Shown: positions 42,001 through 61,195 of the stretch, one piece after another
Layout of the letters: each line of letters opens with the position of its first letter
How positions within the stretch are numbered: the first letter of the stretch is position 1
From: Auanema rhodensis
Lineage: Eukaryota; Animalia; Nematoda
Assembly (NCBI GenBank): GCA_964057225.1
Contig: CAXKVF010000076.1
Location: 124,001-188,000, forward strand
Length of the DNA stretch: 64,000 nt
Direction: 5' to 3'
Position numbers and translations under genes: made by a program
The notes under the pieces: generated by a model
What the model was told of the DNA's origin: nothing
Seen by the model: only the letters and a program-made list of their open reading frames with translations
Database searches by the model: none

Positions 42001-44456
42001 TTGGTATGTAACTCGCTTCACGTGAAAGATAAAGAGATGCGGTTTTCAAAATTAGATTCCCCATGTCCATATTAGTCTAAAAACAAATTTTTATTGATAT
42101 TGGTGCATGGTAACCATGACTTTGAAATTTACGTGAACTTTAATTTATGCTAATTAAATGTACACGTGATGTGCACTTGGTATGTAACTCGCTTCACGTG
42201 AAAGATAAAGAGATGCGGTTTTCAAAATTAGATTCCCCATGTCCATATTAGTCTAAAAACAAATTTTTATTGATATTGGTTCATGGTAACCATGACTTTG
42301 AAATTTACGTGAACTTTAATTTATGCTAATTGAATGTACACGTGATGTGCACTTGGTATGTAACTCGCTTCACGTGAAAGATGAAGAGATGCGGTTTTCA
42401 AAATTAGATTCCCCATGTCCATATTAGTCTAAAAACAAATTTTTATACATATTGGTTCATGGTAACCATGACTTTGAAATTTACGTGAACTTTAATTTAT
42501 GCTAATTAAATGTACACGTGATGTGCACTTGGTATGTAACTCGCTTCACGTGAAAGATAAAAAGATGCGGTTTTCAAAATTAGATTGCCCATGTCCATAT
42601 TAGTCTAAAAACAAATTGTTATTGATATTGGTTCATGGTAACCATGACTTTGAAATTTACGTGAACTTTAATTTATGCTAATTAAATGTACACGTGATGT
42701 GCACTTGGTATGTAACTCGCTTCACGTGAAAGATAAAGAGATGCGGTTTTTAAAATTAGATTCCCCATGTCCATATTAGTCTAAAAACAAATTTTTATTG
42801 ATATTGGTTCATGGTAACCATGACTTTGAAATTTACGTGAACTTTAATTTATGCTAATTAAATGTACACGTGATGTGCACTTGGTATGTAACTCGCTTCA
42901 CGTGAAAGATAAAGAGATGCGGTTTTCAAAATTAGATTCCCCATGTCCATATTAGTCTAAAAACAAATTTTTATTGATATTGCTTCATGGTAACCATGAC
43001 TTTGAAATTTACGTGAACTTTAATTTATGCTAATTAAATGTACACGTGATGTGCACTTGGTATGTAACTCGCTTCACGTGAAAGATAAAGAGATGCGGTT
43101 TTCAAAATTAGATTCCCCATGTCCATATTAGTCTAAAAACAAATTTTTATTGATATTGCTTCATGGTAACCATGACTTTGAAATTTACGTGAACTTTAAT
43201 TTATGCTAATTAAATGTACACGTGATGTGCACTTGGTATGTAACTCGCTTCACGTGAAAGATAAAGAGATGCGGTTTTCAAAATTAGATTCCCCATGTCC
43301 ATATTAGTCTAAAAACAAATTTTTATTGATATTGGTGCATGGTAACCATGACTTTGAAATTTACGTGAACTTTAATTTATGCTAATTAAATGTACACGTG
43401 ATGTGCACTTGGTATGTAACTCGCTTCACGTGAAAGATGAAGAGATGCGGTTTTCAAAATTAGATTCCCCATGTCCATATTAGTCTAAAAACAAATTTTT
43501 ATACATATTGGTTCATGGTAACCATGACTTTGAAATTTACGTGAACTTTAATTTATGCTAATTAAATGTACACGTGATGTGCACTTGGTATGTAACTCGC
43601 TTCACGTGAAAGATAAAAAGATGCGGTTTTCAAAATTAGATTGCCCATGTCCATATTAGTCTAAAAACAAATTGTTATTGATATTGGTTCATGGTAACCA
43701 TGACTTTGAAATTTACGTGAACTTTAATTTATGCTAATTAAATGTACACGTGATGTGCACTTGGTATGTAACTCGCTTCACGTGAAAGATGAAGAGATGC
43801 GGTTTTCAAAATTAGATTCCCCATGTCCATATTAGTCTAAAAACAAATTTTTATTGATATTGGTTCATGGTAACCATGACTTTGAAATTTACGTGAACTT
43901 TAATTTATGCTAATTAAATGTACACGTGATGTGCACTTGGTATGTAACTCGCTTCACGTGAAAGATAAAGAGATGCGGTTTTCAAAATTAGATTGCCCAT
44001 GTCCATATTAGTCTAAAAACAAATTGTTATTGATATTGGTTCATGGTAACCATGACTTTGAAATTTACGTGAACTTTAATTTATGCTAATTAAATGTACA
44101 CGTGATGTGCACTTGGTATGTAACTCGCTTCACGTGAAAGATGAAGAGATGCGGTTTTCAAAATTAGATTCCCCATGTCCATATTAGTCTAAAAACAAAT
44201 TTTTATTGATATTGGTGCATGGTAACCATGACTTTGAAATTTACGTGAACTTTAATTTATGCTAATTAAATGTACACGTGATGTGCACTTGGTATGTAAC
44301 TCGCTTCACGTGAAAGATAAAGAGATGCGGTTTTCAAAATTAGATTGCCCATGTCCATATTAGTCTAAAAACAAATTGTTATTGATATTGGTTCATGGTA
44401 ACCATGACTTTGAAATTTACGTGAACTTTAATTTATGCTAATTAAATGTACACGTG
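1..44456. repeat. 176-bp tandem satellite DNA array, left arm (~252 head-to-tail monomers, continues beyond the window start)
   Basis: The monomer GTCCATATTAGTCTAAAAACAAATTTTTATTGATATTGGTTCATGGTAACCATGAC...GATTCCCCAT recurs at 1, 177, 353 and onward with a constant 176-bp period. Copies differ only by scattered substitutions. Confidence 0.99.
44451..44456. other. Left copy of 6-bp target-site duplication CACGTG
   Basis: The satellite normally reads ...AATGTA-CACGTG-ATGTGCAC.... Here AATGTA-CACGTG is followed directly by the element end AGTAGAGAG. Confidence 0.97.
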
Positions 44457-45520
44457 AGTAGAGAGCCATGCCGAATTTACTAACCACGCCCCCAAACAGT
44501 TGCTAAAAACATACTTTTGAGGGCGTCAGCTGCTAAAATCATACTTTTGGGGGCGTCAGCTGTCAAAATCATATTTTCGGCGTCAGCTGTCAAAAATATA
44601 CTTTTCCTCCCGAGGCAGGCTCTCGAGCCTGCGCATGAATCAAAATGCATGATTTTTTTTTTTAAAATTATTTTTTAATGTATTATTTTAAATGAATTTT
44701 TATTATTTATATATTTGTTAATTGTATTTGTAAATATTTTTAAACTTATTTCTTTTTAAATGAATTTTTATTATTAATATATGTTTTAAATATTATTATT
44801 TAATTATTTCTTTTTAAATGTATTTTATATATTTTTAAAATATTATTAAAATTATCTCCTTTTAAATGTATTTTTAATATTTATACATTTGAATAAACTT
44901 TTTAATATATATTGCTTTTGTTTTAATTTATAAAATTTGAATAAAATATATAAAAGCTAATTAATATGTTCACCGTACCTTTTATGGGTTAATCAATGGA
45001 ACTCATATCGAAGGTTAATTCGATAAGAAGTAATAAATATTTAAACTAAATTTAATGAAACACATATCGAAGGTTAATTCGATAAGATATATTTTATATA
45101 TTTATTTTTTAATTTTATTTGTTTACATTGTTTATAGATTGTGTTTATTATAGTTTATAATTATTAATTTAACTTTTAAAAAGTTTGTTGTTTATCTAGG
45201 CGAACCATTTTGTTCACCGTACCTATTATGGGTAAATCAATGGAACACATATCGAAAGTTAATTCGATAAGAACGATATGGAATACAAAAGTTAATGGAA
45301 CACATATCGAAGGTTAATTCGATAAGAACGATATGAAATACAAAAGTTAATGGAACACATATCGAAGGTTAATTCGATAAGATCGTTAAAACAGGTGCAC
45401 TGACCCACACATGTACCACATGGCAAAAGTTTTGTTCATAAAAATATGATAAATAGCTGTACAGCACAAGTACCCATAACGCTAACGAATACTTACTATG
45501 CCAAGGGGTCATGGGTATAT
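44457..45520 (+). repeat. Left terminal inverted repeat (near-perfect core 44457-44762, imperfect extension to ~45520)
   Basis: 44457-44762 matches the reverse complement of 60885-61189 apart from one indel in an A-run. Similarity resumes at ~44965-45087 and ~45381-45520 against ~60425-60683. Confidence 0.93.
44510..44606. repeat. Subterminal ~30-bp tandem repeats (CATACTTTT..GGCGTCAGCTG..AAAAT, about 3.5 copies), mirrored at ~61040-61136
   Basis: Read directly. GGCGTCAGCTG occurs three times in each TIR. Confidence 0.85.
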
Positions 45521-45791
45521 AGTTTTTAGTATCAAAAATGTTAATGGAACACATATCGAATATCAATTCGATAAGATTGGTGAAACAGATACGTTGACCT
45601 ACAATGAACCAAATGGCAAAGCACTTGTTCATTAAAGTATAACAAATAGCTGTATAGCATATGCATCAAGATTTCTAATATTCTCAAATTACTTGGAAAG
45701 AAGAGTATATAGAAAAAGTTTTAGTGTGTATATTACTAATATTCTAATACCCTAACTCAAAGAACACATATCGATGATTAATTCGATAAGA
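44995..45791. repeat. Cluster of seven ~34-bp palindromic repeats AATGGAACACATATCGAAGGTTAATTCGATAAGA
   Basis: Copies start at about 44995, 45054, 45239, 45294, 45349, 45543 and 45759. The core TATCGAA-N6-TTCGATA is a dyad. Two inverted copies lie in the right TIR (~60559-60651). Confidence 0.9.
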
Positions 45792-45951
45792 TTGTTGAAA
45801 CAGTTGCGCTGACCACAACAATACATGCGTATTTATTAACAGCGGATTGGCAACTGCCACTGTTGACAGCTGTAATATGATACAATGTTGAGTGTTGGCA
45901 ACATTGTTACGTGACAATAAAACAACTGACTGTTCTTGCAATGAAGTGTAA

Positions 45952-45957
45952 TATAAA
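45952..45957 (+). promoter_or_regulatory. Putative TATA box of the pPolB gene
   Basis: TATAAA lies about 70 bp upstream of the proposed ATG at 46023. Confidence 0.35.
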
Positions 45958-46022
45958 TGTGTAAAATGAAATATGGATAACTACCTCTCAGAGTTTGCAT
46001 AATTTTATTCTAACAAGATACA

Positions 46023-47302
46023 ATGGCTGCTAACAGGTTGTGTTTTTTCCTATCTTTTTTTTTTTTTAATTAAAATATTTATTTTCAGTTATAAGCGTGT
46101 ATGTGAAGAGTTGGGGTTCGATTATGAGGAAATTTATCAACTCAGGTAATTTAACAATATTTTTAAAATATACATCTTTGTTTTTTTTTTAGTAAGCGCA
46201 TAAAACTTACCGAGAGTGGTGGTGTTGAGCTGTGTGACCCCGCAATAACCACTTCCAATAGTGGTCCCTCGTCATCAAGGGTTATTGAAGTTATCACCTT
46301 GGATGACAGCGATAATGAGTAAGCTATCGTATAATGAAAAAGCATGAAATTTTTTTTTTTCAGAGAATGGAATCCCGAGATGCCATCAACTAGTGGAGAA
46401 CAATTAGGAGGCGGTTCATCCTTCAACGATATTTGTCAAATAAAGGTACGAGCTTTTAACTTTTTTTTTTTTTTCATGTTACAATTCTTTTCACTCTATA
46501 TCTTTTATTTGATTACATATCTTGAGCAATTTTGAATTCTGCCATCTATTTTTAAACAAATCATCATACATTTGGTGGCTTTTTGAAAAATAAAATAAAA
46601 TCTTATCCCAAATCCATGCCATAATATCATTTATTAAATTTTTATTCATTAAAATACACTTAAATTTAAATATTTTGATGCTCAAAAACTGACACATTTA
46701 AATATTTTGTATTTTTCAAATCATTTCACTCCATCTCTTTCATTTAATTTCATATTTTAAACAATTTTAAATTTTTACCACTACTTTATAATTTTTATTT
46801 ATTAAACTTTTTAATCATTAAATTACACTTAAATTTAAATATTTTGATGCGCAAAAACAGAAACATTTAAATATTTTGTTTTTTTTCTAAACCATTTCAC
46901 TCCATCTATTTTAAACAATTTTATATTTCTACCACTATTTCATAATTTCATTTTTTAAATTTTTAATCATTAAAAAAAAAACATTTAAATTTCAATATTG
47001 TGATGCTCAAAAACTGAAACATGAAATTGATTTATATTTTCTAAGCCATTTCACTTCATCTCTTTTATTTAATCACATATCTTGAACAAATTTAAATTTC
47101 TATCACTTTTTCATAATTTCGTTTATTAAATTTTTAATCACTAAAAAACATTTAAATTTCAATATTGTGATGCTCAAAAACTGAAACATTTAAATATTTT
47201 GTATTTTCTAAACCATTTCACTTCATCTCTTTTATTTATATATATTTTAAACAATTTTATAATTCTACTATTATTTAATTTTTATTTATTAAATTTTTAA
47301 AC

Positions 47303-47333
<31 letters not shown>

Positions 47334-50300
47334 TGATGCTCAAAAACTGAAACATTTAAATATTTTGTATTTTTCTAATCGTTTTGAAACAAACTAAACA
47401 TATATTTGAAAACATTTCAATTAAATAAAAAAAAATAACGACTATAACAAACAAAGAGACATAATAATTTTAAGCAAAAGATGAAACAATTCATATATAT
47501 TCTTAAAACTATTTTTATTTAAACTTTTAAAAATAAAAATAAAAAAAGCATGTAAACTGTTATAAATGTTGTTTATTATAGTGGTCACACCGGCGCATAA
47601 AACGCACCGGTCGTTTTACCAACGTGGTCGTTCGATCGCTCACGTTCCCACACTTGGAAAATGTTGATGAACCAATGCATGTTATCATGCCGCGGTTATT
47701 CAACGAATTCCTTGATCGTTGTCTTGCTGAAAGCGGTGTGCCTGATAAGCAAAAAGCCTTATTTTGTTTATCAATTGAGCACCCTTCCTTTGAAAAGGGC
47801 TCCATATTTATGGACTTTCGTAGAAGGGAGCATCTGGATGGCGTAGCCATTATGAATGCCATCAGCAAGGTGCAGCAATCAAAACGAGAGGCTGTGATCA
47901 GCCAGGCAATGAATATTGAGATGTATGTGTTTGATGAAAGGCCAGCGCAGCCAAGCCTGATGCCTGGTGAAGGTAGAGTCGGGTTTTATTTTGACCCCGA
48001 ACTCAAAATACCTGGAACCATTGCCAACACTGACTCACATTGTCTGGCTAGATCAGCAGTTGTGGGAATGTGGAAAGCTGACGAGCTGGCCACTGAAGAT
48101 GGCGATGAGAAGCGAAGGCTGCAAAACCTTCGTCGCAATTACATCTTATTGCCAAATCAGCCACACCATATCAATTTATTAAATAGGTGTGGTATTTCTG
48201 TAGATTTACCAAATTATAATTTAATTCATTTAAACATTATTGCCAGCTGTAATACAAACTATAAGTTTGTAGTATATGCTAGACCGCCTGGACAGCGTAT
48301 GTACACTATCCAGAAAATATTTAATGAAGCGGCTAGCAAATTGGTAACACTAGGTTACCGAAATAATCACTATGATTGTATTACAGCTGGTAGTCGTTCG
48401 AAAATTTTTGATGGTATTATATGTCAACACTGTAAGTTATCTTACAATACAGTGTTGCATAGATGTAAAGCCAAATGTAAAAAATGCCACACCTATAATT
48501 GTAATGCGATGGGGAATGTGGTTGAGAGTAGCGTGAGGTGTGATAGTTGTAGAGTTTTGTTTAAAACTCAACAATGCTTCGATAGGCATTTGCGAAAAGC
48601 CTGCCGAAAATTCAAGGTATTTTGTGAAAATTTAAAGTTGTACATAACAAGCTTAAATTCAGACATATGTGGCGTGTGATCACTATCACATGGTCCGTGC
48701 TGATAGACCGCACAATTGCAATGAAAAATTCTGCAAAAAGTGCGGTCAGACAAAGCCTGAAGAGCACTCTTGTTGTTGGGTTCCACCTAACGACAAGAAG
48801 AAGGCTCAGCTAAAAAAGAAGCAAGAAAAGTTCAAGGTTTGTATTTAACATCTTTACAAGTGTAATGCTTACTTGTTTAAGATTATATTTTATGACTTTG
48901 AAACAGTTGTGTTAAAAAACGGCACAAATGTTCATGAATATGCAGATGAACAATGGCCCAATATGGTTGTGTATAACAAATTTTGTGAAAGTTGTATAGA
49001 TGCCAATTCCTGTGAGAAATGCACAACCAAGGAGGGCCATTTTGGGTACCAACAAGGTGATAGTGAATGGTCTGTAACAGATCGTTTCCTTGATTGGTTA
49101 CTCAACTTTTCTGAGAATGATAATGCAATTTTGATTGCGCACAACGGGTCGCGCTTTGACATACATTTCTTGGTGTCTAGGCTGATAAACCGTGGAATAT
49201 ATCCTGACCCCATTTTAAATGGGACCAAGATTATTAGCATGGTTGTCAAGCCATTAAGAGGTCAAAACATTAACCATTTATGTTTTAAAGATAGTTATTT
49301 ACTAGTGCCTTTACCCTTATCAGCGTTACCCAAGGCATTTGGTGTACCTGATATGAGTAAAGGACAATTCCCATACCTCTTTAACCACCCAATAAATTAT
49401 GGCAAAGTGCTACCATCCTTGCCACCAAAGCATTACTATTGTACTGCTAGAATGAAAGCAGAAGACCTAGCTTCATTCAATATTTGGTATGAGGAGCGTA
49501 ATCAAAGTGTGTTTGATTTTGATGAGGAGCTTCTGGAATATTGTAGGACAGATGTCCGTATTTTAACCAACTGTATGAAAGTGTACATGAAGTTGGCAAC
49601 CGCCACCACTGGCTGGAATCCTGTCATACAATGTATGACATTTGCCAGTTTCTCTTTATTCCAGGCAAGTTTTTTAAAATACAAGCATTTTCAAAACTAG
49701 TATATTACAGTTGAAAATGAACCACATTAAAGAGAACCAAGTGGGTATTCTGCCTGAGACTGGTTATTATGCCGGCCAGAAGCAGAGTATAATTGCCATA
49801 AAATACATTAAATGGCTAGAACACGGATTAGGCCGCCCATTAATGCATAAGCTTAATGGTGGTGAATTTGTTGTGCGAGTAGATGGCCAACGCTATCTAC
49901 TTGATGCTTATGACAGTGTGGCTAATCACGGCTATGAGGTGAGTAATTTGTAATAAATGTAAAAAATGATAAAATTTTGTAGTTTAATGGCTGTATTTAT
50001 CATGGTTGCCCCCAGTGCACCAACAAGACTGCTATTGCACCAGGCAGAAATGGTGAAACAATGGAAGAGGTAAGCAATACTTTTTTAATCATTTTAAGCT
50101 GAAACATTTAGGTTTATGAAAAAACCATGAAAAGGCTTGAGGCTATTCAAAGCCAGGGCATTAGTGTAACCACTGTGTGGGAACACGAAATTACTGCTCA
50201 AATGTCATCAAATGAGCAAATGGCAAATTTTATGAAGGACACTGAGGTTGTAACTCGATTGGCACCTCGAGATGCCTTCACCGGCGGCCGAACTCAAACA

Positions 50301-51811: not shown

Positions 51812-51899
51812 TTTTTAATATATTTGAATTTATAAATTTTATTATCGCGTGTATATTTGTATATGGTTGTATTTATAGATTTTTATGTATAGTTGTATT

Positions 51900-51942
51900 A
51901 ATAAATTTTATTCTTCTCATCAAATGTTTTAAAGAGTTTATT
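51900..51942. terminator. Back-to-back polyadenylation signals between convergent pPolB and major capsid genes
   Basis: AATAAA at 51900-51905 on the + strand; TTTATT at 51907-51912 and 51937-51942, which read AATAAA on the - strand. Confidence 0.5.
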
Positions 51943-51949
51943 ACATACA

Positions 51950-53176
51950 TTACAAACTGGTATCAATATATGGAGCACGATTGTTGTCAATTGAAAGAAT
52001 AGAGTCATATTCTGCATAAACAATAGCATATAAACCCTCTTGCGGCGTTTGTTGACCAAATTCCAATTTCAGGGCCACATTACCTTGTCGTATAACATCA
52101 AATAACTCGGACGAGTGTACAGTCGGTGAAATATCAAATACAAAAAATGTGAAGCCGGTTTTATACATTGCTGGTGTAATACCATTGGATGAATCTGTAC
52201 GACCAAGACCCAAACCCTCCAACATGTCAATATATGCTGTGGCATAGGAAGAACGCCATTCTAAATTATAAGGGCGGGTAGGTATTACCCGATTGTTGAG
52301 CGTCAAGTATATATTTTTCAATTCAAACGGTTTAAAGTTGAATGGCGAATGTTTAAAAGTACCATTATAGGCGTGTGCGCCGACAAGACCTACTACAACA
52401 CGTTTCGGTGTATGCGACGTGAATAATATGTTATTGGGTGAATCCAAACGGCCTCCTTCTATGAAATAAGAGCGCATTTTCACTGACGTCATGGGGTAGT
52501 GTATTCGTTCCTTTACAAGTTTATCTTCTATAGCCATAGCTAATCCAGCGTTTAGATCAAACTCTTGAATAAGCAAGTGCACATCGTTGATATCTATTTT
52601 CAGGTTTGGAAACTCCTCCTTCATTGCAGCATCCTTGCTTTCATTATTCCATCCAAGTGTGTCAATTAAGAAATTATCACGGTTTGGATATGCAGTTAGC
52701 TCCATTTTTGAATAGTTTACAAACAGTCGTTCCTGATTGAATTTGACGCCTGATATGGCAAGTTTGCTCTCTTTAACATCGTTGCTATACATTAGAATAT
52801 TCTCAATATATGTTTTGTAGGCATGATTTACGGTAGAGTCATACACGCTAACATCACCAATTTTTAAATGATACGAGTGTATCAAACTGGCTGCAAATTG
52901 TTGGCATGGTGCAAAAACAAGGTTGTCTGGTACTGGATCACCGTTTGTGGTTACAATTTTGAATTTTACATTCAACCAACACCTTCTCAGATTAAGAAAT
53001 GATTTGGAATTTTGGGCTATAACAAATTCCCATGGTCCTTGAGGAAGAAAAGTATTTTTTAAAGGAACTTGTACAGTACGAGTGGATTCAACACCTAATG
53101 CCGACGCCGGTATGTCACTATAATTAATATTAGGTAAAAGTGCTTGTGCTGATTTTGAATCTATCAATTTAGCCAT
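51950..53176 (-). CDS. Double jelly-roll major capsid protein (Polinton PY type), 408 aa
   Basis: Recognisable Polinton MCP blocks: GPWEFVI, PKRVVVGLV..AYNG.FKHSPFNFKPF, GFTFFVFDISP, GNVALKLEF, IVYAEYDSILSID. Confidence 0.9.
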   Translation of the reverse strand: MAKLIDSKSAQALLPNINYSDIPASALGVESTRTVQVPLKNTFLPQGPWEFVIAQNSKSFLNLRRCWLNVKFKIVTTNGDPVPDNLVFAPCQQFAASLIHSYHLKIGDVSVYDSTVNHAYKTYIENILMYSNDVKESKLAISGVKFNQERLFVNYSKMELTAYPNRDNFLIDTLGWNNESKDAAMKEEFPNLKIDINDVHLLIQEFDLNAGLAMAIEDKLVKERIHYPMTSVKMRSYFIEGGRLDSPNNILFTSHTPKRVVVGLVGAHAYNGTFKHSPFNFKPFELKNIYLTLNNRVIPTRPYNLEWRSSYATAYIDMLEGLGLGRTDSSNGITPAMYKTGFTFFVFDISPTVHSSELFDVIRQGNVALKLEFGQQTPQEGLYAIVYAEYDSILSIDNNRAPYIDTSL

Positions 53177-53629
53177 TTAAATACGATACGACCGCTCACG
53201 AGTTATGCACAGACGCTTATGAGGTTTTGTGGTTTTGCGTCGTCGCCGCTTGCCCAAACCGGTAAGATCTCGTATAGCCTGCCGGCCGGCTGTTTTAAGA
53301 GTTTGCTTGATATTATCGCCCTTGAGCACCCCATCAACAATTTCATTGCTAGTTTTTAGCAACTGGCCGCCAAGAGGTGAATTTACAACTGGACTATTGC
53401 TTACAGCACTGGATAATGCATTCCTTCCAGCATTGATGAGATTTTGGGCTATAGGTGATTGAATAATGCGTGGTAAAAACGATGCCAATGTTGCCAGTAT
53501 ACCACCCAGGCCATGACCTCTCTGCATACCACGTTGAAACATCATTCCACTAAATGGCGCCCCACCCATTTGTTGATTCAAAAGTGTTGTCCATTGAATT
53601 GAGTTCAAGTCTAGAAGGAGGTGTGGCAT
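53177..53629 (-). CDS. Gly-rich virion core/membrane-lytic (adenovirus pVI-like) precursor, ~150 aa from ATG 53629
   Basis: QRGHG is followed by an amphipathic helix LGGILATLASFLPRII, and the C-terminus is basic (LTGLGKRRRRK). The gene abuts the MCP gene. The functional label is an inference. Confidence 0.7.
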   Translation of the reverse strand: MPHLLLDLNSIQWTTLLNQQMGGAPFSGMMFQRGMQRGHGLGGILATLASFLPRIIQSPIAQNLINAGRNALSSAVSNSPVVNSPLGGQLLKTSNEIVDGVLKGDNIKQTLKTAGRQAIRDLTGLGKRRRRKTTKPHKRLCITRERSYRI

Positions 53630-53679
53630 ATTGAACCGCACGTGCGCAATACAAAAGTTACACTAGATCATTTTACTAA

Positions 53680-54135
53680 ATGTATTCGTCTGAAATAGCG
53701 TCACTATTGCGATCTGTCCGCATCACTCGAAAACTATTCCTCGGTGTATTTAGCGCGGATACTCTACCCAAAACACGTCGAAAGAACTTTGCACTTGTTG
53801 TAAATACTGACACACACGATAAACCGGGCACACATTGGCAAGTCATCTTTGTACGTAATGATCAAGCCTACTTTTTCTGTAGCTTGGGTTATAAAATGAA
53901 CAAGTACATTCGTCATTATCTGGCCAAATATAAAAATGTAAAAGTTAATACTTGCAAACCACAACGCATAATTGAATACACTTGTGGTGGTTATGCAATA
54001 TTTGTAATACTAATGTTGTCAGCTGGTAATACATTTGAAAGCATTTGTTCATTTTTTAAACTATTACAAAACGATGATGTCTTTATTAAAGCGTTTATGC
54101 ATAAAGTATTCGACTATAAATTATCTAGCATATGA
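53680..54135 (+). CDS. Adenain-like (clan CE) cysteine maturation protease, 151 aa
   Basis: VNTD...PGTHW (catalytic His) and PQ.....TCGGY (oxyanion Gln, catalytic Cys), with the N-terminal FLGVFSADTLP block typical of Polinton proteases. Confidence 0.9.
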   Translation: MYSSEIASLLRSVRITRKLFLGVFSADTLPKTRRKNFALVVNTDTHDKPGTHWQVIFVRNDQAYFFCSLGYKMNKYIRHYLAKYKNVKVNTCKPQRIIEYTCGGYAIFVILMLSAGNTFESICSFFKLLQNDDVFIKAFMHKVFDYKLSSI

Positions 54136-54393
54136 TCAACCTCGCCATTAAAACGTCACCTGCTACATTAGGTGGTCAGTTATGAATATTCCCTGTCACT
54201 GTGAATTATGTATAAGATACACGTTGGAACAATCTGTGCCAACACCCCTGTACAAAAAGATTTTGAAACGTATTTCAGTGCCATTCATTAAAGGAATATC
54301 TCTGGGACTAGGCTTTTGTACAACACTAGTCATTATTCCACTCATTATATAAAAGTGAGTTGACTGTGTGTGGTTGTTTTTTATTTTCCTCTA

Positions 54394-54858
54394 ATGGAAC
54401 TTTTATGTAACAAGTATTGTGTTACGTGCAAGGAAATATTTTCATCAGCCAAGCATTTTAGTGATCACGTATTAAAAAGACATGACGGGATTCAACCCGT
54501 ATGTAACAGTTATATCAGCAATGCTGACTTTATTCAAAAATATGGACATTTGGATGGTGTTCGTAGACGTTTGTGCCCTTATTGTAGTGAAACTTTTGGA
54601 ACAAGATTCAATTGTCAGCGTCATATTCGGCGTCTTCATAATAGTAATGGAACGAATGGTAAAGATGGTGATGGAAATGATACCAGCGAACCCTCTGAAA
54701 AAACTGAGGAGTTTGTACAGTCAACCGAACCAAAACGATGCCGCTGCAATAGTAACCGAGAATATTCACAACACGAGCCGCGCATCGAACAAAACGGCGC
54801 TGAACTACCTTTTAAACCTTCGAAAATCGTAATGTGGTCTTGTATAACTGTTGAATAA
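54394..54858 (+). CDS. C2H2 zinc-finger protein (two fingers), ~154 aa
   Basis: CVTC-x12-HVLKRH and CPYC-x12-HIRRLH. TATATAAAAG lies at 54346-54355 upstream of ATG 54394, and AATAAA overlaps the stop. Confidence 0.8.
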   Translation: MELLCNKYCVTCKEIFSSAKHFSDHVLKRHDGIQPVCNSYISNADFIQKYGHLDGVRRRLCPYCSETFGTRFNCQRHIRRLHNSNGTNGKDGDGNDTSEPSEKTEEFVQSTEPKRCRCNSNREYSQHEPRIEQNGAELPFKPSKIVMWSCITVE

Positions 54859-54863
54859 AACAT

Positions 54864-55721
54864 TTATTTCACATTTTTAACATGTAATGTAACAACTGTA
54901 GAACCATAATTAAATTGCATAGGGCGGCCAAATTCATCTAAAATTTCAATACGTATAGTATCGAGTGTTTGCTTAGTGATTGGTACATAACGAATAGGAT
55001 TAAATGTTTTGGCAATCATTTTACCAAATTCGGTGGGAGGTGGTACAGGTAAACATGCAAGTAAATTAGCTTTCACATTACCGAGAATGGAATATTCTAC
55101 AATATCACAATATATATACATTGTATTAATGTTATTTGAAAAATCAATGGGGCGCCTGGCTATTAACGTGTCGTTGATAATTTTATTCTCAAAGCCAAGA
55201 AAATATGCGAGAGCATCACCGAGTGTTGCATTCAATAATAGCCGCTTACTTGTTACAAACTCTATGCGTTGTAGTGTTTTGTTAAATCGAAACGTGGCGT
55301 CTGCCAGCATTTCCTTGACAAGTTTAGCCTCAGCTTGTCGATTATTATACCACTTTTTCACATCTTCATCTTTATCTATCAAACCCTTTATACGTGCTTC
55401 TTCCTCAGCTCCAAGAGGTTTAGTGCTGCTAGCAATAAATTGTTCTTTTCCAGCATTGATTCCGCGTATTATTTCATCACCATTTGCATAGTTACCTTTG
55501 GGCAAGTGCAGAATAAACTTTCTGTTGGAAAAACGTAGTGTATAAGAAAGATTTTCTTGTACATTTAATATCGAACACGGAAAAATTATGTCTGTCAGCC
55601 CAATGCAATATCTGTTATTGCGTAGCCTTAATGTTTCAGGTAACCTGGTAAGAAACACTGATGAGGTATTACTTTTTTCAGAGTCAACTGATGACGGCAA
55701 AGTAATGTAAAAGTCATCCAT
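54864..55721 (-). CDS. Minor capsid protein/penton (Polinton PX type), 285 aa
   Basis: Starts MDDFYITLPSS..N....F.TRLP and contains IGLTDI, YIYCDIVEYSILGN...LL, and IRIEILDEFGRPMQF....VVTLH. Confidence 0.9.
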   Translation of the reverse strand: MDDFYITLPSSVDSEKSNTSSVFLTRLPETLRLRNNRYCIGLTDIIFPCSILNVQENLSYTLRFSNRKFILHLPKGNYANGDEIIRGINAGKEQFIASSTKPLGAEEEARIKGLIDKDEDVKKWYNNRQAEAKLVKEMLADATFRFNKTLQRIEFVTSKRLLLNATLGDALAYFLGFENKIINDTLIARRPIDFSNNINTMYIYCDIVEYSILGNVKANLLACLPVPPPTEFGKMIAKTFNPIRYVPITKQTLDTIRIEILDEFGRPMQFNYGSTVVTLHVKNVK

Positions 55722-55800
55722 CAGAGACCACCACCTGATGCGTGCACACTAGTATAAATGAAATCATTTGCATTATAGGTACATTTACGAGTGGTTGATT

Positions 55801-56448
55801 ATGGTTTTCAGCTTCAAACTACCCAGTCAGACAACTGTAATAGGGGCAACGCAATGTGGTAAAACTACCCTTATAAAACGTATATGTGAAAATACTGAAA
55901 AGTTTTTCAACGTCCCCATTGATAGAATATTCTGGTTCAGTCAATGTGGTACATCGTCAGGTGTTCCATTAAATGATGAGCGTTTAATAGTTATTCAAGG
56001 ACCACCTGATCCGGATATAATAAAAGAGCAAAAGGGAGTAAACACCATACTAGTGCTGGATGATTTGATGAATTTTTTCTCATCGAATAAAGCGGCTAAA
56101 GAATTACTCAACAACATTTTTACAGTGTGGGCACATCACTGGAATTTGGCAGTGTTTAATCTTGTGCAAGCTGCATTTCAGCTAGACAGGACCAGTCGAA
56201 TTAATAGTACATATATAATACTGATGAAAAGTCATTCGGATATATTACAAATACGTAATTGTCTGCAACAATTATTTGGCCCCCGCTTTAAAAATGCTCT
56301 AGAAGCATATGATGATGCAATGTCTACACCCTATAGTCATTTACTGATTGACAACCATCCTTTAACAAATGAGAAACAGCGTATACTATCAGATATAACA
56401 GCGGAGCACCCTATTGTTTATGTAGCCAGAAATATATTCAGTGTTTAA
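55801..56448 (+). CDS. A32/FtsK-like genome-packaging ATPase, ~215 aa
   Basis: Walker A GATQCGKTT, Walker B LVLDDLM, HH.NL.VF.LVQ, R.NSTYIIL and PYSHLLID. Confidence 0.92.
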   Translation: MVFSFKLPSQTTVIGATQCGKTTLIKRICENTEKFFNVPIDRIFWFSQCGTSSGVPLNDERLIVIQGPPDPDIIKEQKGVNTILVLDDLMNFFSSNKAAKELLNNIFTVWAHHWNLAVFNLVQAAFQLDRTSRINSTYIILMKSHSDILQIRNCLQQLFGPRFKNALEAYDDAMSTPYSHLLIDNHPLTNEKQRILSDITAEHPIVYVARNIFSV

Positions 56449-56460
56449 TGTGCATGTTCA

Positions 56461-56769
56461 ATGAGTGGTCGTATTTTGTCAAATTACAACTTTTTATCTT
56501 CTTGTGCCAAAACCCCTTGTTCTGTTTCCTCATTTTCTTTTTCACAAATTGAAATTATTGTTGAAATTGTATTTAATATTGTGAAAAATAATAATTTTCT
56601 CTTAACTAACAAGGAATATAAAACCCTTTTGCCCATATCCTCATTATTACGTCAAATAGCTTTGATACGCACACCCGAAAAGGCTAAAACTTTATTGGCA
56701 ACGATTTCACACAAACAATTGAAAACAATAGTTTCATGCGGAATTGCTTATTTTGGTTTTAAAAGATGA
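56461..56769 (+). CDS. Small hypothetical Polinton protein, 102 aa
   Basis: Tightly packed between the ATPase and the next ORF (ATGA overlap). The IVEIVFNIVK..LT..E block resembles the small conserved Polinton ORF found near ATPase and integrase genes. Confidence 0.7.
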   Translation: MSGRILSNYNFLSSCAKTPCSVSSFSFSQIEIIVEIVFNIVKNNNFLLTNKEYKTLLPISSLLRQIALIRTPEKAKTLLATISHKQLKTIVSCGIAYFGFKR

Positions 56770-57503
56770 AACTCAATCATAAATATCGTCTAATCCCTGT
56801 TGATGATGAAACGCTGAATATAGACAAGTTTGATGCTGAATTGAAGCTCTTACGAGAGAATAAATCTATACCCGATTATAAAAAGGCTGAACTATACGAA
56901 GACTTGATTACCCGTCTCAAAAACTATAGAGAAAGCATAGATGCGCCTATATCAGTACAAGTGGAAAATGCTGATCCACCATTATTGCCAGAATACAAGC
57001 TGCCACGAAAGTATAACGATCTGTGGGAAAGATTTCCAGAGGTGCGTACAAACAAAAATAACCAACTTGTGATTAATAATGAGCCCGTACCAAACACAAA
57101 TATTACAAAAATTTTGGATTTTGTACTGGATAAAACAAAGACGGAACCCAATGGATTCTCAGTATTAGCCAAATTCTTAGCCAGTAATGGGGTCTCTAGC
57201 CCTAACAAGAAGGCAAAAAATGTAGAGCCTGCCGTCAGTAACAAGGATTCAGTTGATCCCGTGCCTACATCCACATCGGCTGTCACAGACTTGGATGCTA
57301 CTATTAATATATTACCTAGAACACCACGTCATCGTAAGGCTGTTATTCGATATTCACCCTCTCCGCGTCGTACATTCAAATCCAAAGCTATAAATAAAAA
57401 GGCAAAACCCGCTGACACTGGTGAATCATATTACACACCTCAGGCGGGAGAAACACAGAATGGCAAAGGCCGTAAACGATTCTACATTAGATTATGGAAG
57501 TAA
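56766..57503 (+). CDS. Hypothetical Polinton protein upstream of the integrase, 245 aa, with a basic Ser/Pro/Arg-rich C-terminus
   Basis: Long ORF overlapping both neighbours, with a KYRLIP start, an INNEPVPNTNITKIL..PNGF block and a QNGKG motif near the C-terminus. Confidence 0.75.
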   Translation: MKLNHKYRLIPVDDETLNIDKFDAELKLLRENKSIPDYKKAELYEDLITRLKNYRESIDAPISVQVENADPPLLPEYKLPRKYNDLWERFPEVRTNKNNQLVINNEPVPNTNITKILDFVLDKTKTEPNGFSVLAKFLASNGVSSPNKKAKNVEPAVSNKDSVDPVPTSTSAVTDLDATINILPRTPRHRKAVIRYSPSPRRTFKSKAINKKAKPADTGESYYTPQAGETQNGKGRKRFYIRLWK

Positions 57504-58527
57504 TGTTTTGGAGAACATTTATTATAATATTAAGCATCCAGCTTCTTATACGTCTGCCAAAAATCTATTATTGGAAGCGCGAAAGCATGGCATCGCAAAA
57601 GCACAAGTTGAAAGTTTTTTGCAAGACTCTGAAACTTTTACACGTCATAAACCAACCAGACTGCATATGCAGACTAAAAAGACTAGAGGCTGTGGTCGAT
57701 TCCTAACAATGCAAGCAGATTTGGTTGATATGCAAAAATATAAAAAATCAAATGACGGCTATGCTTACATGTTGACCATGATTGATGTTTATACACGCAT
57801 GTTATATGTTAGGCCTTTGAAAACTAAAGGTGGTTTAGAGGTTGCTACTGCATTTGAAAATGTATTCAAGGATTTTATACCAATCCAACTAATAACGGAT
57901 AACGGTGCAGAGTTTTATAATAGTCATTGTGAAAAACTATTCAAAAAATTTGCCATACTGCATGGATCAACAAGTTCACCACAAAAGGCGGCAATGGTGG
58001 AGCGAGCAAATAGAACTTTAAAAACGCGCATGATGAAATATCTCTATTACAAGAATAATCATCGATGGATAGATATACTAGATGACTTGGTCGAAGGAAT
58101 AAACAAATCTTATAATCGGTCGATTAAAATGCGCCCCGTAGATGTTACAGCAAATATATTCGTTGAAGAATATGCACCAGCTGTTCGCAACCGATTCAAA
58201 ATTGGTGATAATGTTCGCATAAGCAAGAACAGGCGTACTTTTGAAAAAAGTTACGAGTCTGGATATACAATGGAACTATTCACAATTGATGAGATTGTAG
58301 CCGGGAACCCAACCGTGTATAAACTTGTAGATTATAATGGTGAACGTATAAAGGGAATATTCTATGAGCCTGAACTTGTGTTGGCTACTAATAAAAGCAA
58401 CCAGTACTATATTGAGAAAGTTTTGAAAGAGCGTACACGAAATGGTAAACGCCAAGTATTTGTAAAATGGAGTGGCTATCCCGACAACTTTAATGAATGG
58501 ATAGATGCAGAAAATTTAAATGTATAA
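57460..58527 (+). CDS. int: Retroviral-like (RVE) DDE integrase with C-terminal chromodomain, ~355 aa
   Basis: QADLVDM (D), ITDNGAEF (D), AMVERANRTLK (E), YN...RSIKMRP.DV, and chromodomain YYIEKVL...FVKWSGYPDNFNEWI. Confidence 0.95.
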   Translation: MAKAVNDSTLDYGSNVLENIYYNIKHPASYTSAKNLLLEARKHGIAKAQVESFLQDSETFTRHKPTRLHMQTKKTRGCGRFLTMQADLVDMQKYKKSNDGYAYMLTMIDVYTRMLYVRPLKTKGGLEVATAFENVFKDFIPIQLITDNGAEFYNSHCEKLFKKFAILHGSTSSPQKAAMVERANRTLKTRMMKYLYYKNNHRWIDILDDLVEGINKSYNRSIKMRPVDVTANIFVEEYAPAVRNRFKIGDNVRISKNRRTFEKSYESGYTMELFTIDEIVAGNPTVYKLVDYNGERIKGIFYEPELVLATNKSNQYYIEKVLKERTRNGKRQVFVKWSGYPDNFNEWIDAENLNV

Positions 58528-58825
58528 TTTTTCACTGTTGTTGTAAACAATTGTATTAATAATAAATGATTTATTTGATCAATCGTTCATATTGTAACAA
58601 TAAAAAACCAGCAAAACATAAAAGCCAAGACAATGATATAACCTATAATTATAAACTGATTAATATTTAAATTTTCAATGCTTACCAGTTGGTTTGAGAG
58701 TCGGCTGTTGATGGATAATTTCAAACTTCAAGAGCTGGAAAAAAAAAATGTTACGGCTAAGAAAATTTAAATATAACATAACAAAATCAACCAACTATCC
58801 ATTAAACAGTTTGTGCTTGTTGTAG

Positions 58826-59419
58826 TCAAAACGATGGATCAAAACGGATAAGCATATTCAAGTTGAGCGCCTGTTGACTTAATTTAAAGTAGAACACATT
58901 CTGCTTATAACCAAAAGACTTGACAGTTGACTCATCAGTATAAATGGCAATGTAACCCATATTATTCAACAATTGTTTTGATGACATGCTAGAATAGGAA
59001 CGCATCTGTAAAAGAAAAAATAATAATTAGAATTAATAATTTTATAATCTCACATTGATTGTTGAATTTTCAGGTTTATAATGACGGAAAACTTTTAAAA
59101 GCCCTAAGGCATCATTCCTCGCTCTACACTTGACACAGAGGCTGAAACAGTGGTACTCGTCTACGACTTGCAATGTATCCCTACAAGTTTTGCAGAGACA
59201 TATTGGTCTCATAACTACAGGCTGTTGTGGAGAGCTATCCTTTGAGATTTGTACCTGCTTTTTTGGTGTGTCTAAACAAAAAATAATTAATAACAAAAAT
59301 AAAACCTTACCAAAGAATGTGGCAGCAAAGTTGGGTCCTGGTGTGGGTGGTCTTGGAACATCCGGTTCCGGTGTCGAAGGTACAATATTCTCTACATCAA
59401 CAAGAGCGGAACGCTTCAT
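58826..59419 (-). CDS. Spliced accessory gene: Pro-rich N-terminus plus Cys/His Zn-binding region, ~168 aa
   Basis: Proposed exons 59419-59311, 59271-59054 and 59005-58826, with GT-AG introns of 39 and 48 nt. Contains CLCKTC-x10-HCFSLCVKC. TATAAAAG lies at ~59705-59712 on the - strand. Confidence 0.55.
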
Positions 59420-59519
59420 GTTTGTAGCCCAATTGGAGGCTTTTCCTAAACAACAACGAACTTTTACGTCTAGGGTCCAAGTAGAGTAGAGGATAGTCCT
59501 AGCAGCAGTCTGTTGACGT

Positions 59520-59670
59520 TGGATCAGATCGTCGGCTTGTTGGCAGAGGTGGATCGGCGAGAAGACTTGGTGGCGGAGCTGGATCGGAGAGTAGACTTGT
59601 TGACAGAGCTGGATCGTAGAGTCGACTTGTTGACAGAGCTGGATCGTAGAGTCGACTTGTTGGCGGAGCT
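59520..59670. repeat. GC-rich 30-bp tandem repeat, 5 copies (TGGATCGTAGAGTCGACTTGTTGACAGAGC)
   Basis: TGGATC recurs at about 59520, 59550, 59580, 59610 and 59640. Confidence 0.92.
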
Positions 59671-60424
59671 GAAATACAAATTTCGGTCTAAAAAATTTTG
59701 CCACCTTTTATACAAACTTTGTTGTAAAGCTCTACCCACTCCGCCTCTTTCACAAAACAGTTGACTGCTGTATGCGGCTTTTCTATTTGTTATATATTAC
59801 AACAAATATATGCATTTATACATTAATTAGCAGTTTGTTGCGCAAACAGCTGCCAAATGCGCTAAAATACACCGATTGCGCCAACAGTTGCCGGATTAAC
59901 AACCTGTAAACTATCCGCTTATTAATTACTTGTTACATCATTCGATTTCGTAAATACAAATATTTAACAATAATTCAACTCATTTGTGACAAGTCCCTAT
60001 ACAATAACAACTGTCATCCAAAATTGTGGAAGATTACAATAGGATCGTTTAATATTGTATTCATATTCTTATTATAACAGCTGTGGTACACTCTTACTTT
60101 TATAGTTTAGGAAACACTAATTCAAAATGTTGGATCCTACTGAGGAAACGCAGGATTGTTGCGAAAAACAGACTTGTACACATCCGATTACAAGTACAAC
60201 ATTTCCAGACACTTTGTAAAAAAGAAACTCTTACAAAATGTTAACACATGTTCTAATTTTAAATGAAAATTTATTGTTCAATAAATATATTACGAAACAT
60301 TTATTCTATTCTTGAACATAGTTATGAAATACATTAGCTATCAGAACATTTATAAACTATTAGGGCTACAACAACAATTACTTTAAAGTAACATTTTTGA
60401 TGTTAAAAAGTTTGAAAATATTCG

Positions 60425-61189
60425 TATATACTCATGACCCCTTGGCATAGTAAGTATTCTTTAGCGTTATGGGTACATGTGGTGTACAGCTATTTATCAT
60501 ATTTTTATGAACACGACTTTTGCCATGTGGTACATGTGTAGTGCACCTGTTTTAACGATCTTATCGAATTAACCTTCGATATGTGTTTCATTAAATTTAG
60601 TTTAAATATTTATTACTTCTTATCGAATTAACCTTCGATATGAGTTCCATTGATTAACCCATAAGAGGTACGGTGAACATATTGATTACCTTTTAAATTT
60701 ATTTAAATAATTAAAAACAATATATATGAGAAATAATTTATTCAGTTTTAAAGATACAATTAAAAAATATATAAATATTAAAATACATTTAAAAAGAAAT
60801 ATTATTAAAAATATATTTAAAAAGAAACAATTAAATAATAATATTTCCAAATACAATTTAAAATATATATAAATATTAAAAATACATTTAAAAAGAAATA
60901 AGTTTAAAAATATTTACAAATACAATTAACAAATATATAAATAATAAAAATTCATTTAAAATAATACATTAAAAAATAATTTAAAAAAAAAAATCATGCA
61001 TTTTGATTCATGCGCAGGCTCGAGAGCCTGCCTCGGGAGGAAAAGTATATTTTTGACAGCTGACGCCGAAAATATGATTTTGACAGCTGACGCCCCCAAA
61101 AGTATGATTTTAGCAGCTGACGCCCTCAAAAGTATGTTTTTAGCAACTGTTTGGGGGCGTGGTTAGTAAATTCGGCATGGCTCTCTACT
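60425..61189 (-). repeat. Right terminal inverted repeat (near-perfect core 60885-61189)
   Basis: Reverse complement of the left end, lacking the ~290-bp block found at left 45088-45380. Confidence 0.93.
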
Positions 61190-61195
61190 CACGTG
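61190..61195. other. Right copy of 6-bp target-site duplication CACGTG
   Basis: ...CTCTCTACT-CACGTG-ATGTGCACTTGG resumes the satellite in exact register. Confidence 0.97.

What the first reader, a model, noticed from the sequence alone, without database searches (positions are those of the whole stretch)
44451..61195. Intact Maverick/Polinton virus inserted in a homogeneous 176-bp satellite: a possible satellite-targeting polintovirus
Seen: a full-length element with open reading frames, near-identical outer TIRs and a clean CACGTG TSD, sitting at least 44 kb inside a pure satellite array. Known: Polintons make 6-bp TSDs, and some chromodomain-integrase LTR retrotransposons (chromoviruses) target heterochromatin or centromeres. 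Inference: this lineage may use satellite or centromere-like chromatin as its niche, where short-read assemblies would miss it. One insertion cannot prove targeting.
Basis: partly seen in the sequence, partly recalled or inferred. Interest (0 to 1): 0.85.

Follow-up and report, generated by a model that had tools for sequence, protein, structure and literature searches.

The report
Decayed Maverick in germline-only nematode satellite
A partly broken virus-like Maverick transposon is cleanly inserted in a nematode satellite repeat that is discarded from body cells, but most of that germline genome is such repeats, so one insertion there does not show targeting.

Summary
A 16,733-bp element (44457-61189) with roughly 0.8-1.1-kb TIRs (outer 150 nt identical) and a 6-bp CACGTG duplication interrupts a 176-bp satellite without shifting its phase. 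It is a nematode-type Maverick/Polinton: protein-primed polymerase, double-jelly-roll capsid, penton, probable protease and ATPase, and a DDE integrase with an HP1-like chromodomain.

It is not intact. The polymerase needs at least 9-10 frame-disrupting lesions to read as one gene. The capsid gene has one in-frame 36-codon deletion. No fusogen-sized ORF exists.

The satellite is not centromere-like. A published 28-nt FISH probe for repeat AT-1 of Auanema rhodense matches 264 of 267 monomers. AT-1 is an autosome-end repeat kept only in the germline and eliminated from somatic cells. About 61% of that germline genome is eliminated, mostly as tandem repeats, so a random, unselected insertion would often land there.

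The chromodomain keeps all three aromatic-cage residues, and eliminated DNA carries H3K9me3, so tethering is plausible. However, chromodomains are common in this integrase family.

Targeting stays untested. I did not fetch other copies, because fetching DNA of an animal virus-like element is barred. Verdict: a new member of a known kind in an interesting compartment.

The parts
1..44450 (.). 176-bp satellite, left flank (AT-1-type repeat)
   Evidence: TRF gives 252.6 copies at 98% matches. All monomers are 176 bp. The published AT-1 FISH probe matches once per monomer.
44451..44456 (.). Left copy of the target-site duplication CACGTG
44457..61189 (+). Maverick/Polinton element, 16,733 bp, termini AG...CT
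44457..45521 (+). Left TIR. The outer 150 nt are identical to the right end; the inner part is about 90% identical with indels.
44497..44613 (+). Three to four 27-30-nt sub-repeats inside the outer TIR, mirrored in the right TIR
   Evidence: families D7, D8; I9, I10
44988..45818 (+). Seven copies of a ~34-nt motif with an internal imperfect palindrome. Two copies lie in the right TIR at 60553-60651.
   Evidence: D2; I11-I23
46625..47384 (+). AT-rich (15-19% GC) internal tandem repeat, ~155-170-nt unit, non-coding
47624..51811 (+). Protein-primed DNA polymerase B gene, broken by in-frame stops and frameshifts. At least 9-10 lesions over the span and at least 6 within the profile-supported core.
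   Evidence: Pfam PF03175 hits on two separate pieces (E 7e-22 and 7e-17). PHROG DNA-polymerase hit on a third piece in another frame. No frame is open across the span. Lower-bound count. GC is even, with no intron-like gaps.
51950..53176 (-). Major capsid protein (double jelly roll), open frame of 408 aa, with one in-frame internal deletion of 36 codons relative to all relatives
   Evidence: Relatives are 440-463 aa. AF2 pLDDT 91.5. Foldseek: PBCV-1 Vp54, Sputnik and mavirus MCPs at E ~1e-12. BFVD top hit is a bracovirus-borne protein, then NCLDV and adomavirus capsids.
53177..53641 (-). ORF of 154 aa, Gly/Ala-rich with a basic C-terminus, function unknown
   Evidence: no family hit
53680..54135 (+). 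Probable adenain-like cysteine protease, 151 aa
   Evidence: Pfam Peptidase_C5 at E 1.3e-3, below the curated cutoff. His and Gln-x5-Cys motifs are visible in the translation. No PDB sequence hit.
54370..54858 (+). ORF of 162 aa with C2H2-type zinc-finger matches
54864..55721 (-). Minor capsid (penton) protein, 285 aa, ends conserved, variable internal linker
   Evidence: Relatives are 237-332 aa, the best from Auanema sp. JU1783. AF2 pLDDT 86. Foldseek top hit is the mavirus penton at E 1e-9, followed by adenovirus penton base.
55768..56448 (+). Probable packaging ATPase, 226-aa ORF with Walker A and B motifs
   Evidence: Only weak P-loop Pfam hits. Motifs are visible in the translation. No PDB sequence hit.
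56461..57503 (+). Two uncharacterised ORFs (102 and 245 aa) between the ATPase and the integrase
57421..58527 (+). Integrase ORF (likely start at Met14, 57460). The rve core is at 57712-57963. The ORF is full length relative to its relatives.
   Evidence: Pfam rve E 3e-9. 109 relatives. D160 and E194 are invariant and D100 is at least 90% conserved; the ORF ends where relatives end.
58396..58524 (+). C-terminal chromodomain of the integrase. Aromatic cage residues are Y329, W350 and Y353. There is no C-terminal helix, as in all relatives.
   Evidence: Pfam Chromo E 3e-8. PDB hits are Rhino, HP1 and CBX3 at E 3e-8 to 5e-7, with the cage positions aligned. See also A1.
59042..59704 (-). ORF of 220 aa between the integrase and the right TIR, in a local GC rise (0.41-0.46 around 59200-59799). 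It has short peptide repeats and one hydrophobic segment. Possible cargo.
   Evidence: A cargo region next to the integrase is described for nematode Mavericks.
60425..61189 (-). Right TIR
61190..61195 (.). Right copy of the target-site duplication CACGTG
61196..64000 (.). 176-bp satellite, right flank, in phase with the left flank

Best explanation
This is one copy of a nematode-type Maverick/Polinton. A DDE (retroviral-type) integrase of its family inserted it, making a 6-bp staggered cut at a CACGTG in one monomer of the 176-bp AT-1 satellite of Auanema rhodense or a very close relative. AT-1 forms multi-megabase blocks at autosome ends. These blocks exist only in the germline and are eliminated from somatic cells from the 12-cell stage. 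The copy is no longer autonomous: its polymerase gene is broken many times and its capsid gene has an in-frame deletion, while the integrase, penton, protease-like and ATPase-like ORFs remain open. Its location is most simply explained in two steps. First, the target is very large, since most of the germline genome is such repeats. Second, an insertion in gene-free DNA that is absent from the soma costs the host nothing, so it persists. Tethering of the integrase chromodomain to methylated histones on this chromatin may add a bias. That step is inferred, not shown. Shown: element identity, boundaries, duplication, gene content, breaks and satellite identity. Inferred: the mode of integration and the reason for the location.
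For: Boundaries, duplication and phase. TIRs. Polymerase profile hits on separate pieces. Lesion lower bound of 9-10, against about 50 for shuffled sequence. Capsid fold and deletion. Penton fold. Integrase with conserved catalytic columns and a chromodomain. The best named relatives are nematode proteins (Auanema sp. JU1783, C. remanei). The AT-1 probe gives 264 matches against 0 expected. From the preprint 10.64898/2026.08.27.747507: about 61% of the 180-Mb germline genome is eliminated, mostly as tandem repeats of 167-504-nt units. Autosome ends are almost entirely two repeats. Half of the few eliminated genes carry TE domains, and 39% are overlapped by TE annotations against about 0.9% of retained genes. 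The 267 monomers show no indels, which argues that the assembly's frameshifts are real.
Against: Some features would fit an active bias. The chromodomain keeps the complete Y/W/Y cage, and eliminated DNA is H3K9me3-positive in embryos. The duplicated hexamer is a perfect palindrome, and only 6 of 176 monomer positions are palindromic. Lesions are very unevenly spread: all frame-disrupting ones are in the polymerase (P about 1e-3 if uniform). Simple neutral decay after insertion does not predict that. The AT-1 share of the genome could not be read, because the table is an image. Host identity rests on a 28-nt probe match and on protein relatives.
Confidence: 0.7

Rival explanations
1. Active chromatin targeting. 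The integrase chromodomain binds methylated histone H3 on the silent, elimination-destined satellite chromatin and steers integration there, as group I chromodomains are reported to do for chromoviruses. The repeat blocks are then a preferred niche for the family.
For: The chromodomain is closest to Rhino, HP1 and CBX3, with all three cage residues aligned. Group I chromodomains with the YWY cage are described as recognising H3K9me (PMC3605345). A role in site choice was suggested for adintovirus integrases (PMC8502044). Eliminated DNA carries H3K9me3 and lagging DNA carries H3K27me3.
Against: There is only one insertion. The base rate for landing in tandem repeats is already about one half or more. 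The chromodomain occurs in 46 of 109 relatives, including Caenorhabditis ones, so it is not specific to a satellite-dwelling lineage. The domain lacks the C-terminal helix of canonical chromodomains. Histone marks were shown in embryos, not at the time and place of integration.
Confidence: 0.2
2. Sequence-directed insertion. The integrase prefers the palindromic hexamer CACGTG or its context, and the satellite offers two such sites per monomer, hence hundreds of thousands of targets.
For: The duplication is a perfect palindrome. Only 6 of 176 positions in the monomer are palindromic hexamers and 2 are CACGTG. Weakly palindromic target preferences are established knowledge for retroviral-type integrases.
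Against: This is a post hoc observation on a single site (nominal P about 0.03). No target preference is reported in the Maverick papers read here.
Confidence: 0.1
3. Assembly chimera: the element was wrongly joined into a satellite contig.
For: Satellite arrays are hard to assemble. No reads are available here.
Against: Both junctions fall at the same monomer position. The 6-bp duplication is exact and the satellite phase continues exactly across the element. A misjoin would not create this.
Confidence: 0.02
4. Centromere niche: the satellite is centromeric, and the element exploits centromeric chromatin as plant CRM elements do.
Against: The satellite matches AT-1, a terminal autosomal repeat lost from somatic cells. 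Most nematodes have holocentric chromosomes (PMC9071541).
Confidence: 0.03

Closest known systems
Nematode Mavericks/Polintons (Jeong et al. 2023, PMC10748475; Widen et al. preprint 10.1101/2022.07.12.499685)
   Same: The size lies within the 13-25 kb range. It has long TIRs, a short duplication, and the gene set pPolB, PRO, ATPase, MCP, mCP and INT plus uncharacterised ORFs. There is a possible cargo region beside the integrase. The closest named protein relatives are from Auanema and Caenorhabditis.
   Different: There is no fusogen-sized ORF. The polymerase is fragmented and the MCP has an internal deletion. The protein relatives returned are only 45-75% identical. Residence in a germline-restricted satellite is not discussed in either paper: a text search found no mention of satellite, chromodomain or heterochromatin.
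Adintoviruses (Starrett et al. 2021, PMC8502044)
   Same: They are animal elements with pPolB, a retrovirus-like integrase with a predicted chromodomain, and double-jelly-roll capsid genes.
   Different: Adintoviruses are proposed as exogenous viruses. This copy is integrated and cannot be autonomous as it stands. Membership was not tested by phylogeny here.
Tlr elements of Tetrahymena (Maverick-related, in germline-limited eliminated DNA; PMC6411011)
   Same: They are Maverick-type elements lying in DNA that is present in the germline genome and removed from the somatic genome.
   Different: The host is a ciliate, elimination is RNA-guided excision of internal sequences, and the elements are not embedded in a satellite. 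The parallel is one of compartment, not of descent.
Chromoviruses (Ty3/gypsy LTR retrotransposons with a chromodomain integrase)
   Same: They have a C-terminal chromodomain on a DDE integrase. The group I type has the Y/W/Y cage.
   Different: Chromoviruses are RNA-copied LTR elements with 4-5-bp duplications, so the element class is unrelated. Here the chromodomain ends before the usual C-terminal helix.

Membership tests
Maverick/Polinton | Protein-primed family B DNA polymerase | tested here: met
   Pfam PF03175 at E 7e-22 and 7e-17, plus a PHROG DNA-polymerase hit. The gene is present but broken.
Maverick/Polinton | Retrovirus-like DDE integrase | tested here: met
   Pfam rve above the cutoff. 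Catalytic columns are conserved in 13 sequences.
Maverick/Polinton | Double-jelly-roll major capsid protein | tested here: met
   AF2 pLDDT 91.5. Foldseek hits to PBCV-1, Sputnik and mavirus MCPs at E ~1e-12 with TM ~0.6.
Maverick/Polinton | Penton (minor capsid) protein | tested here: met
   Foldseek top hit is the mavirus penton at E 1e-9, followed by adenovirus penton base.
Maverick/Polinton | FtsK/HerA-type packaging ATPase | tested here: inconclusive
   Walker A and B motifs are visible and there are weak P-loop Pfam hits below the cutoff. No PDB sequence hit.
Maverick/Polinton | Adenain-like cysteine protease | tested here: inconclusive
   Peptidase_C5 at E 1.3e-3, 18.9 bits against a cutoff of 21.3. 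His and Gln-x5-Cys are present.
Maverick/Polinton | Long terminal inverted repeats, short (about 6-bp) target-site duplication, AG termini | tested here: met
   Literature values.
Major nematode Polinton family | Fusogen gene among the conserved genes | tested here: not met
   The fusogen is listed among the conserved proteins of C. briggsae Polintons. Here no ORF exceeds 408 aa and no glycoprotein family hit was found. Decayed remnants cannot be excluded.
Chromodomain-guided integrases (group I type) | C-terminal chromodomain with the three aromatic cage residues | tested here: met
   Pfam Chromo E 3e-8. Y329, W350 and Y353 align with the HP1 cage positions.
Chromodomain-guided integrases (group I type) | Binding of methylated histone H3 by the domain | not testable with these tools
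   No binding data are available. The domain lacks the C-terminal helix.
Chromodomain-guided integrases (group I type) | Copies enriched in heterochromatin beyond its share of the genome | not tested
   This needs the DNA of other copies. Fetching it is barred for an animal virus-like element, so it is listed under referred steps.
AT-1 tandem repeat of Auanema rhodense | Match to the published AT-1 FISH probe; unit size within the reported range | tested here: met
   264 matches at one mismatch or fewer, one per monomer, with 0 expected. The 176-nt unit lies within the 167-504 nt range.
Centromeric satellite | Satellite marks the centromere | tested here: not met
   Identified as a terminal, somatically eliminated repeat. 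Most nematodes are holocentric. No centromeric-histone data were examined.

The most novel reading that the evidence does not exclude
Nematode Mavericks whose integrase carries an HP1-like chromodomain preferentially colonise the H3K9me3/H3K27me3-marked satellite blocks that are kept only in the germline and eliminated from the soma. Programmed DNA elimination would then give virus-like elements of an animal a germline-only refuge with no somatic cost. This would parallel the Tlr elements in the germline-limited DNA of Tetrahymena.
Probability: 0.18. Interest if true: 0.7.

Novelty: new member of a known kind. Interest (0 to 1): 0.38.

Why it matters
The finding changes from 'a virus that targets centromere-like satellite' to 'a decaying Maverick copy in DNA that only the germline keeps'. 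This shows that eliminated satellite blocks in Auanema hold large virus-like elements, not only the reverse transcriptases, polymerases and helitrons mentioned in the preprint. It also shows that, in a genome mostly made of such repeats, one insertion says little about targeting. The question is now directly answerable by a census in the published germline assembly: do chromodomain-bearing Mavericks exceed the base rate in eliminated DNA? A positive answer would link programmed DNA elimination to the persistence of virus-like elements in animals.

Tried and rejected
- PDB sequence searches with the capsid profile, the ATPase and the protease gave nothing useful. The capsid and penton were only recognised by predicted fold.
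- Pfam on ten small ORFs in the AT-rich and sub-terminal regions gave no hits. PHROGs gave only weak hits.
- Rfam and tRNA scans of the element and junctions found nothing.
- A literature search for a 176-bp nematode satellite found nothing relevant. The satellite was identified instead through a FISH probe printed in a preprint on Auanema DNA elimination.
- Gao et al. 2008 (PMC2259100) is not held. The chromodomain groups are cited from PMC3605345 instead.
- Higher-order structure in the satellite: none found.
- Introns in the polymerase: rejected as the main explanation. GC is even through the span and nematode Maverick core genes are described as intronless. No intron predictor or polymerase relative was available, so this remains a caveat.
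The polymerase lesion count is therefore a lower bound from reading frames alone.

Full report
**Observation**

The window is a 176-bp tandem repeat from 1 to 44456 and from 61190 to 64000, with 98% matches. All 252 monomers on the left and 15 on the right are exactly 176 bp. Mean pairwise identity is 98.3%, there is no higher-order period, and the two flanks do not differ.

The array is interrupted by 16,733 bp (44457-61189). CACGTG stands at 44451-44456 and again at 61190-61195. After one copy the satellite resumes in exact phase. This is therefore a real insertion with a 6-bp target-site duplication and not a misjoin.

The element begins AG and ends CT. Its outer 150 nt are identical at the two ends, and there are 3 mismatches in 219 nt. 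Inverted similarity with indels runs on to about 45521 on the left and 60425 on the right.

**What the element is**

- **Polymerase.** Pfam finds the organellar/viral family B DNA polymerase on two separate pieces of the + strand (E 7e-22 and 7e-17). PHROGs finds a DNA polymerase on a third piece in another frame.
- **Major capsid protein.** The 408-aa ORF on the minus strand has a large family of about 440-aa relatives: 7,225 cluster representatives at E up to 0.001. Its model (pLDDT 91.5) matches double-jelly-roll capsid proteins of PBCV-1, Sputnik, mavirus and iridoviruses at E about 1e-12. In the viral library the best match is a protein carried by a Cotesia bracovirus, followed by giant-virus, adomavirus and adintovirus capsid proteins.
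- **Penton.** The 285-aa ORF (pLDDT 86) matches the mavirus penton (E 1e-9) and adenovirus penton base.
- **Protease.** A 151-aa ORF has a sub-threshold adenovirus-protease hit. It shows His and Gln-x5-Cys motifs.
- **ATPase.** A 226-aa ORF has Walker A and B motifs.
- **Integrase.** The 368-aa ORF has an rve core and a C-terminal chromodomain.
- **Host lineage.** The best named relatives of the integrase, capsid and penton come from Auanema sp. JU1783 and Caenorhabditis remanei.

The gene set, size, TIRs and duplication fit nematode Mavericks/Polintons as described by Jeong et al. (PMC10748475) and Widen et al. (10.1101/2022.07.12.499685).

**State of the genes**

The element is not intact.

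- **Polymerase.** No frame is open across the span. A count-only calculation gives at least 9-10 frame-disrupting lesions (in-frame stops and frameshifts) over the whole span. At least 6 fall within the part supported by profiles. Shuffled sequence of the same composition needs about 50, so this is a decayed gene and not random DNA. GC is even through the span, with no intron-like gaps. The literature describes the core genes of nematode Mavericks as intronless. Undetected introns remain a caveat, because I had neither an intron predictor nor a polymerase relative.
- **Capsid gene.** The frame is open, but it lacks 36 well-occupied alignment columns that all 8 close relatives have. That is one in-frame deletion.
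- **Fusogen.** It is listed among the conserved proteins of C. briggsae Polintons. Here no ORF exceeds 408 aa and no glycoprotein family hit was found.
- **Open genes.** The integrase and penton end where their relatives end. The protease-like and ATPase-like ORFs are open.
- **Assembly quality.** The satellite shows no length errors in 267 monomers, so the frameshifts are unlikely to be assembly noise.

**An unexplained feature**

All frame-disrupting lesions lie in the polymerase. About 1,430 codons of the other five genes have none. If lesions fell evenly, the chance of this is about 1e-3. Possible readings are:

- a polymerase-defective lineage that depends on other copies while its integrase and capsid genes stay under selection;
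- a polymerase already decayed at the time of insertion;
- introns that I could not detect.

Other copies would settle this.

**The integrase chromodomain**

The last 50 residues match Rhino, HP1 and CBX3 chromodomains (E 3e-8 to 5e-7). Y329, W350 and Y353 align with the three HP1 cage residues. These are the Y/W/Y residues that define group I chromodomains and recognise methylated H3K9 in HP1 (PMC3605345).

The domain stops before the usual C-terminal helix, as in all relatives aligned.

By my count from the table, 46 of 109 integrase relatives carry a precomputed chromodomain hit. A chromodomain was already noted for adintovirus integrases (PMC8502044). The feature is therefore family-wide and not a mark of a satellite-dwelling lineage.

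**What the satellite is**

A preprint on Auanema rhodense (10.64898/2026.08.27.747507) prints a 28-nt FISH probe for repeat AT-1. In the window this probe matches 264 times at one mismatch or fewer, once per monomer, against 0 expected. The probe covers the very CACGTG at which the element sits.

According to the preprint:

- AT-1 is one of two repeats that make up the multi-megabase blocks at both ends of all autosomes.
- These blocks are germline-restricted and are eliminated from somatic cells from the 12-cell stage.
- About 61% of the 180-Mb germline genome is eliminated, mostly tandem repeats with units of 167-504 nt.
- Elimination bodies are typically H3K9me3-positive, and lagging DNA before elimination is H3K27me3-rich.
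- Half of the 360 eliminated genes carry transposon domains.
- Mavericks are not mentioned.

Most nematodes are holocentric (PMC9071541). The host is therefore A. rhodense or a very close relative, and the satellite is not centromere-like.

**Why the element is there**

Most of the germline genome is tandem repeat, so a random insertion has roughly an even or better chance of landing in it. An insertion in gene-free DNA that is absent from the soma should also persist. One insertion therefore carries almost no weight for targeting.

Three observations favour some bias:

- the complete aromatic cage of the chromodomain;
- the histone marks on eliminated DNA;
- the palindromic duplication, given that 6 of 176 monomer positions are palindromic hexamers and 2 are CACGTG.

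I rate base rate plus retention as the main explanation, chromodomain tethering as a live rival, and sequence preference as a weaker one. The chimera and centromere readings are close to excluded.

**Comparison with what is known**

The element is a new member of the nematode Maverick group. It works like other Mavericks and adintovirus-type elements, except that this copy has lost its polymerase. Its compartment recalls the Maverick-related Tlr elements in the germline-limited DNA of Tetrahymena (PMC6411011). Its integrase recalls chromoviruses only in the chromodomain.

The closest named relatives are nematode proteins, so I treated the element as a virus-like element of an animal. I fetched no DNA of other copies or relatives by look-up, pattern or accession. 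The census that would test targeting was therefore not done. Relatives' proteins came only from the protein searches.

- In my thinking I also noted roughly where the capsid deletion lies.

Noticed in passing
window 47624-58527: Frame-disrupting lesions are confined to the polymerase (at least 9-10). About 1,430 codons of the integrase, ATPase, penton, protease and capsid genes have none. This is roughly a 1e-3 event if lesions fell evenly.
   Followed up: partly
window 44497-44613 and mirrored at 61033-61149: The outer TIR holds three to four 27-30-nt sub-repeats sharing a GC-rich core followed by an A/T-rich stretch. They may be protein-binding sites at the element ends.
   Followed up: no
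window 44988-45818 and 60553-60651: A ~34-nt motif with an internal imperfect palindrome occurs seven times in the left sub-terminal region but only twice on the right. This accounts for the unequal TIR lengths.
   Followed up: no
window 46600-47500: [quoted passage not shown] It has no coding signal.
   Followed up: no
window 59042-59704 (-): A 220-aa ORF lies in a local GC rise between the integrase and the right TIR. It has short tandem peptide repeats, one hydrophobic segment and a Cys-rich tail. Its position fits the cargo region described for nematode Mavericks.
   Followed up: partly
window 54370-54858 (+) and 47624-48679 (+): A C2H2 zinc-finger ORF sits between the protease and the penton. 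A Cys/His-rich tail ends the first ORF of the polymerase span.
   Followed up: no
window 1-44456: The satellite has 85 distinct monomer sequences among 267 and only 3 columns where the commonest base is below 90%. It has no indels at all and no higher-order repeat.
   Followed up: yes
capsid model: The best match in the viral structure library is an uncharacterised protein of a Cotesia bracovirus (E 5e-25). This is presumably a Maverick-derived capsid gene carried in a wasp bracovirus.
   Followed up: no
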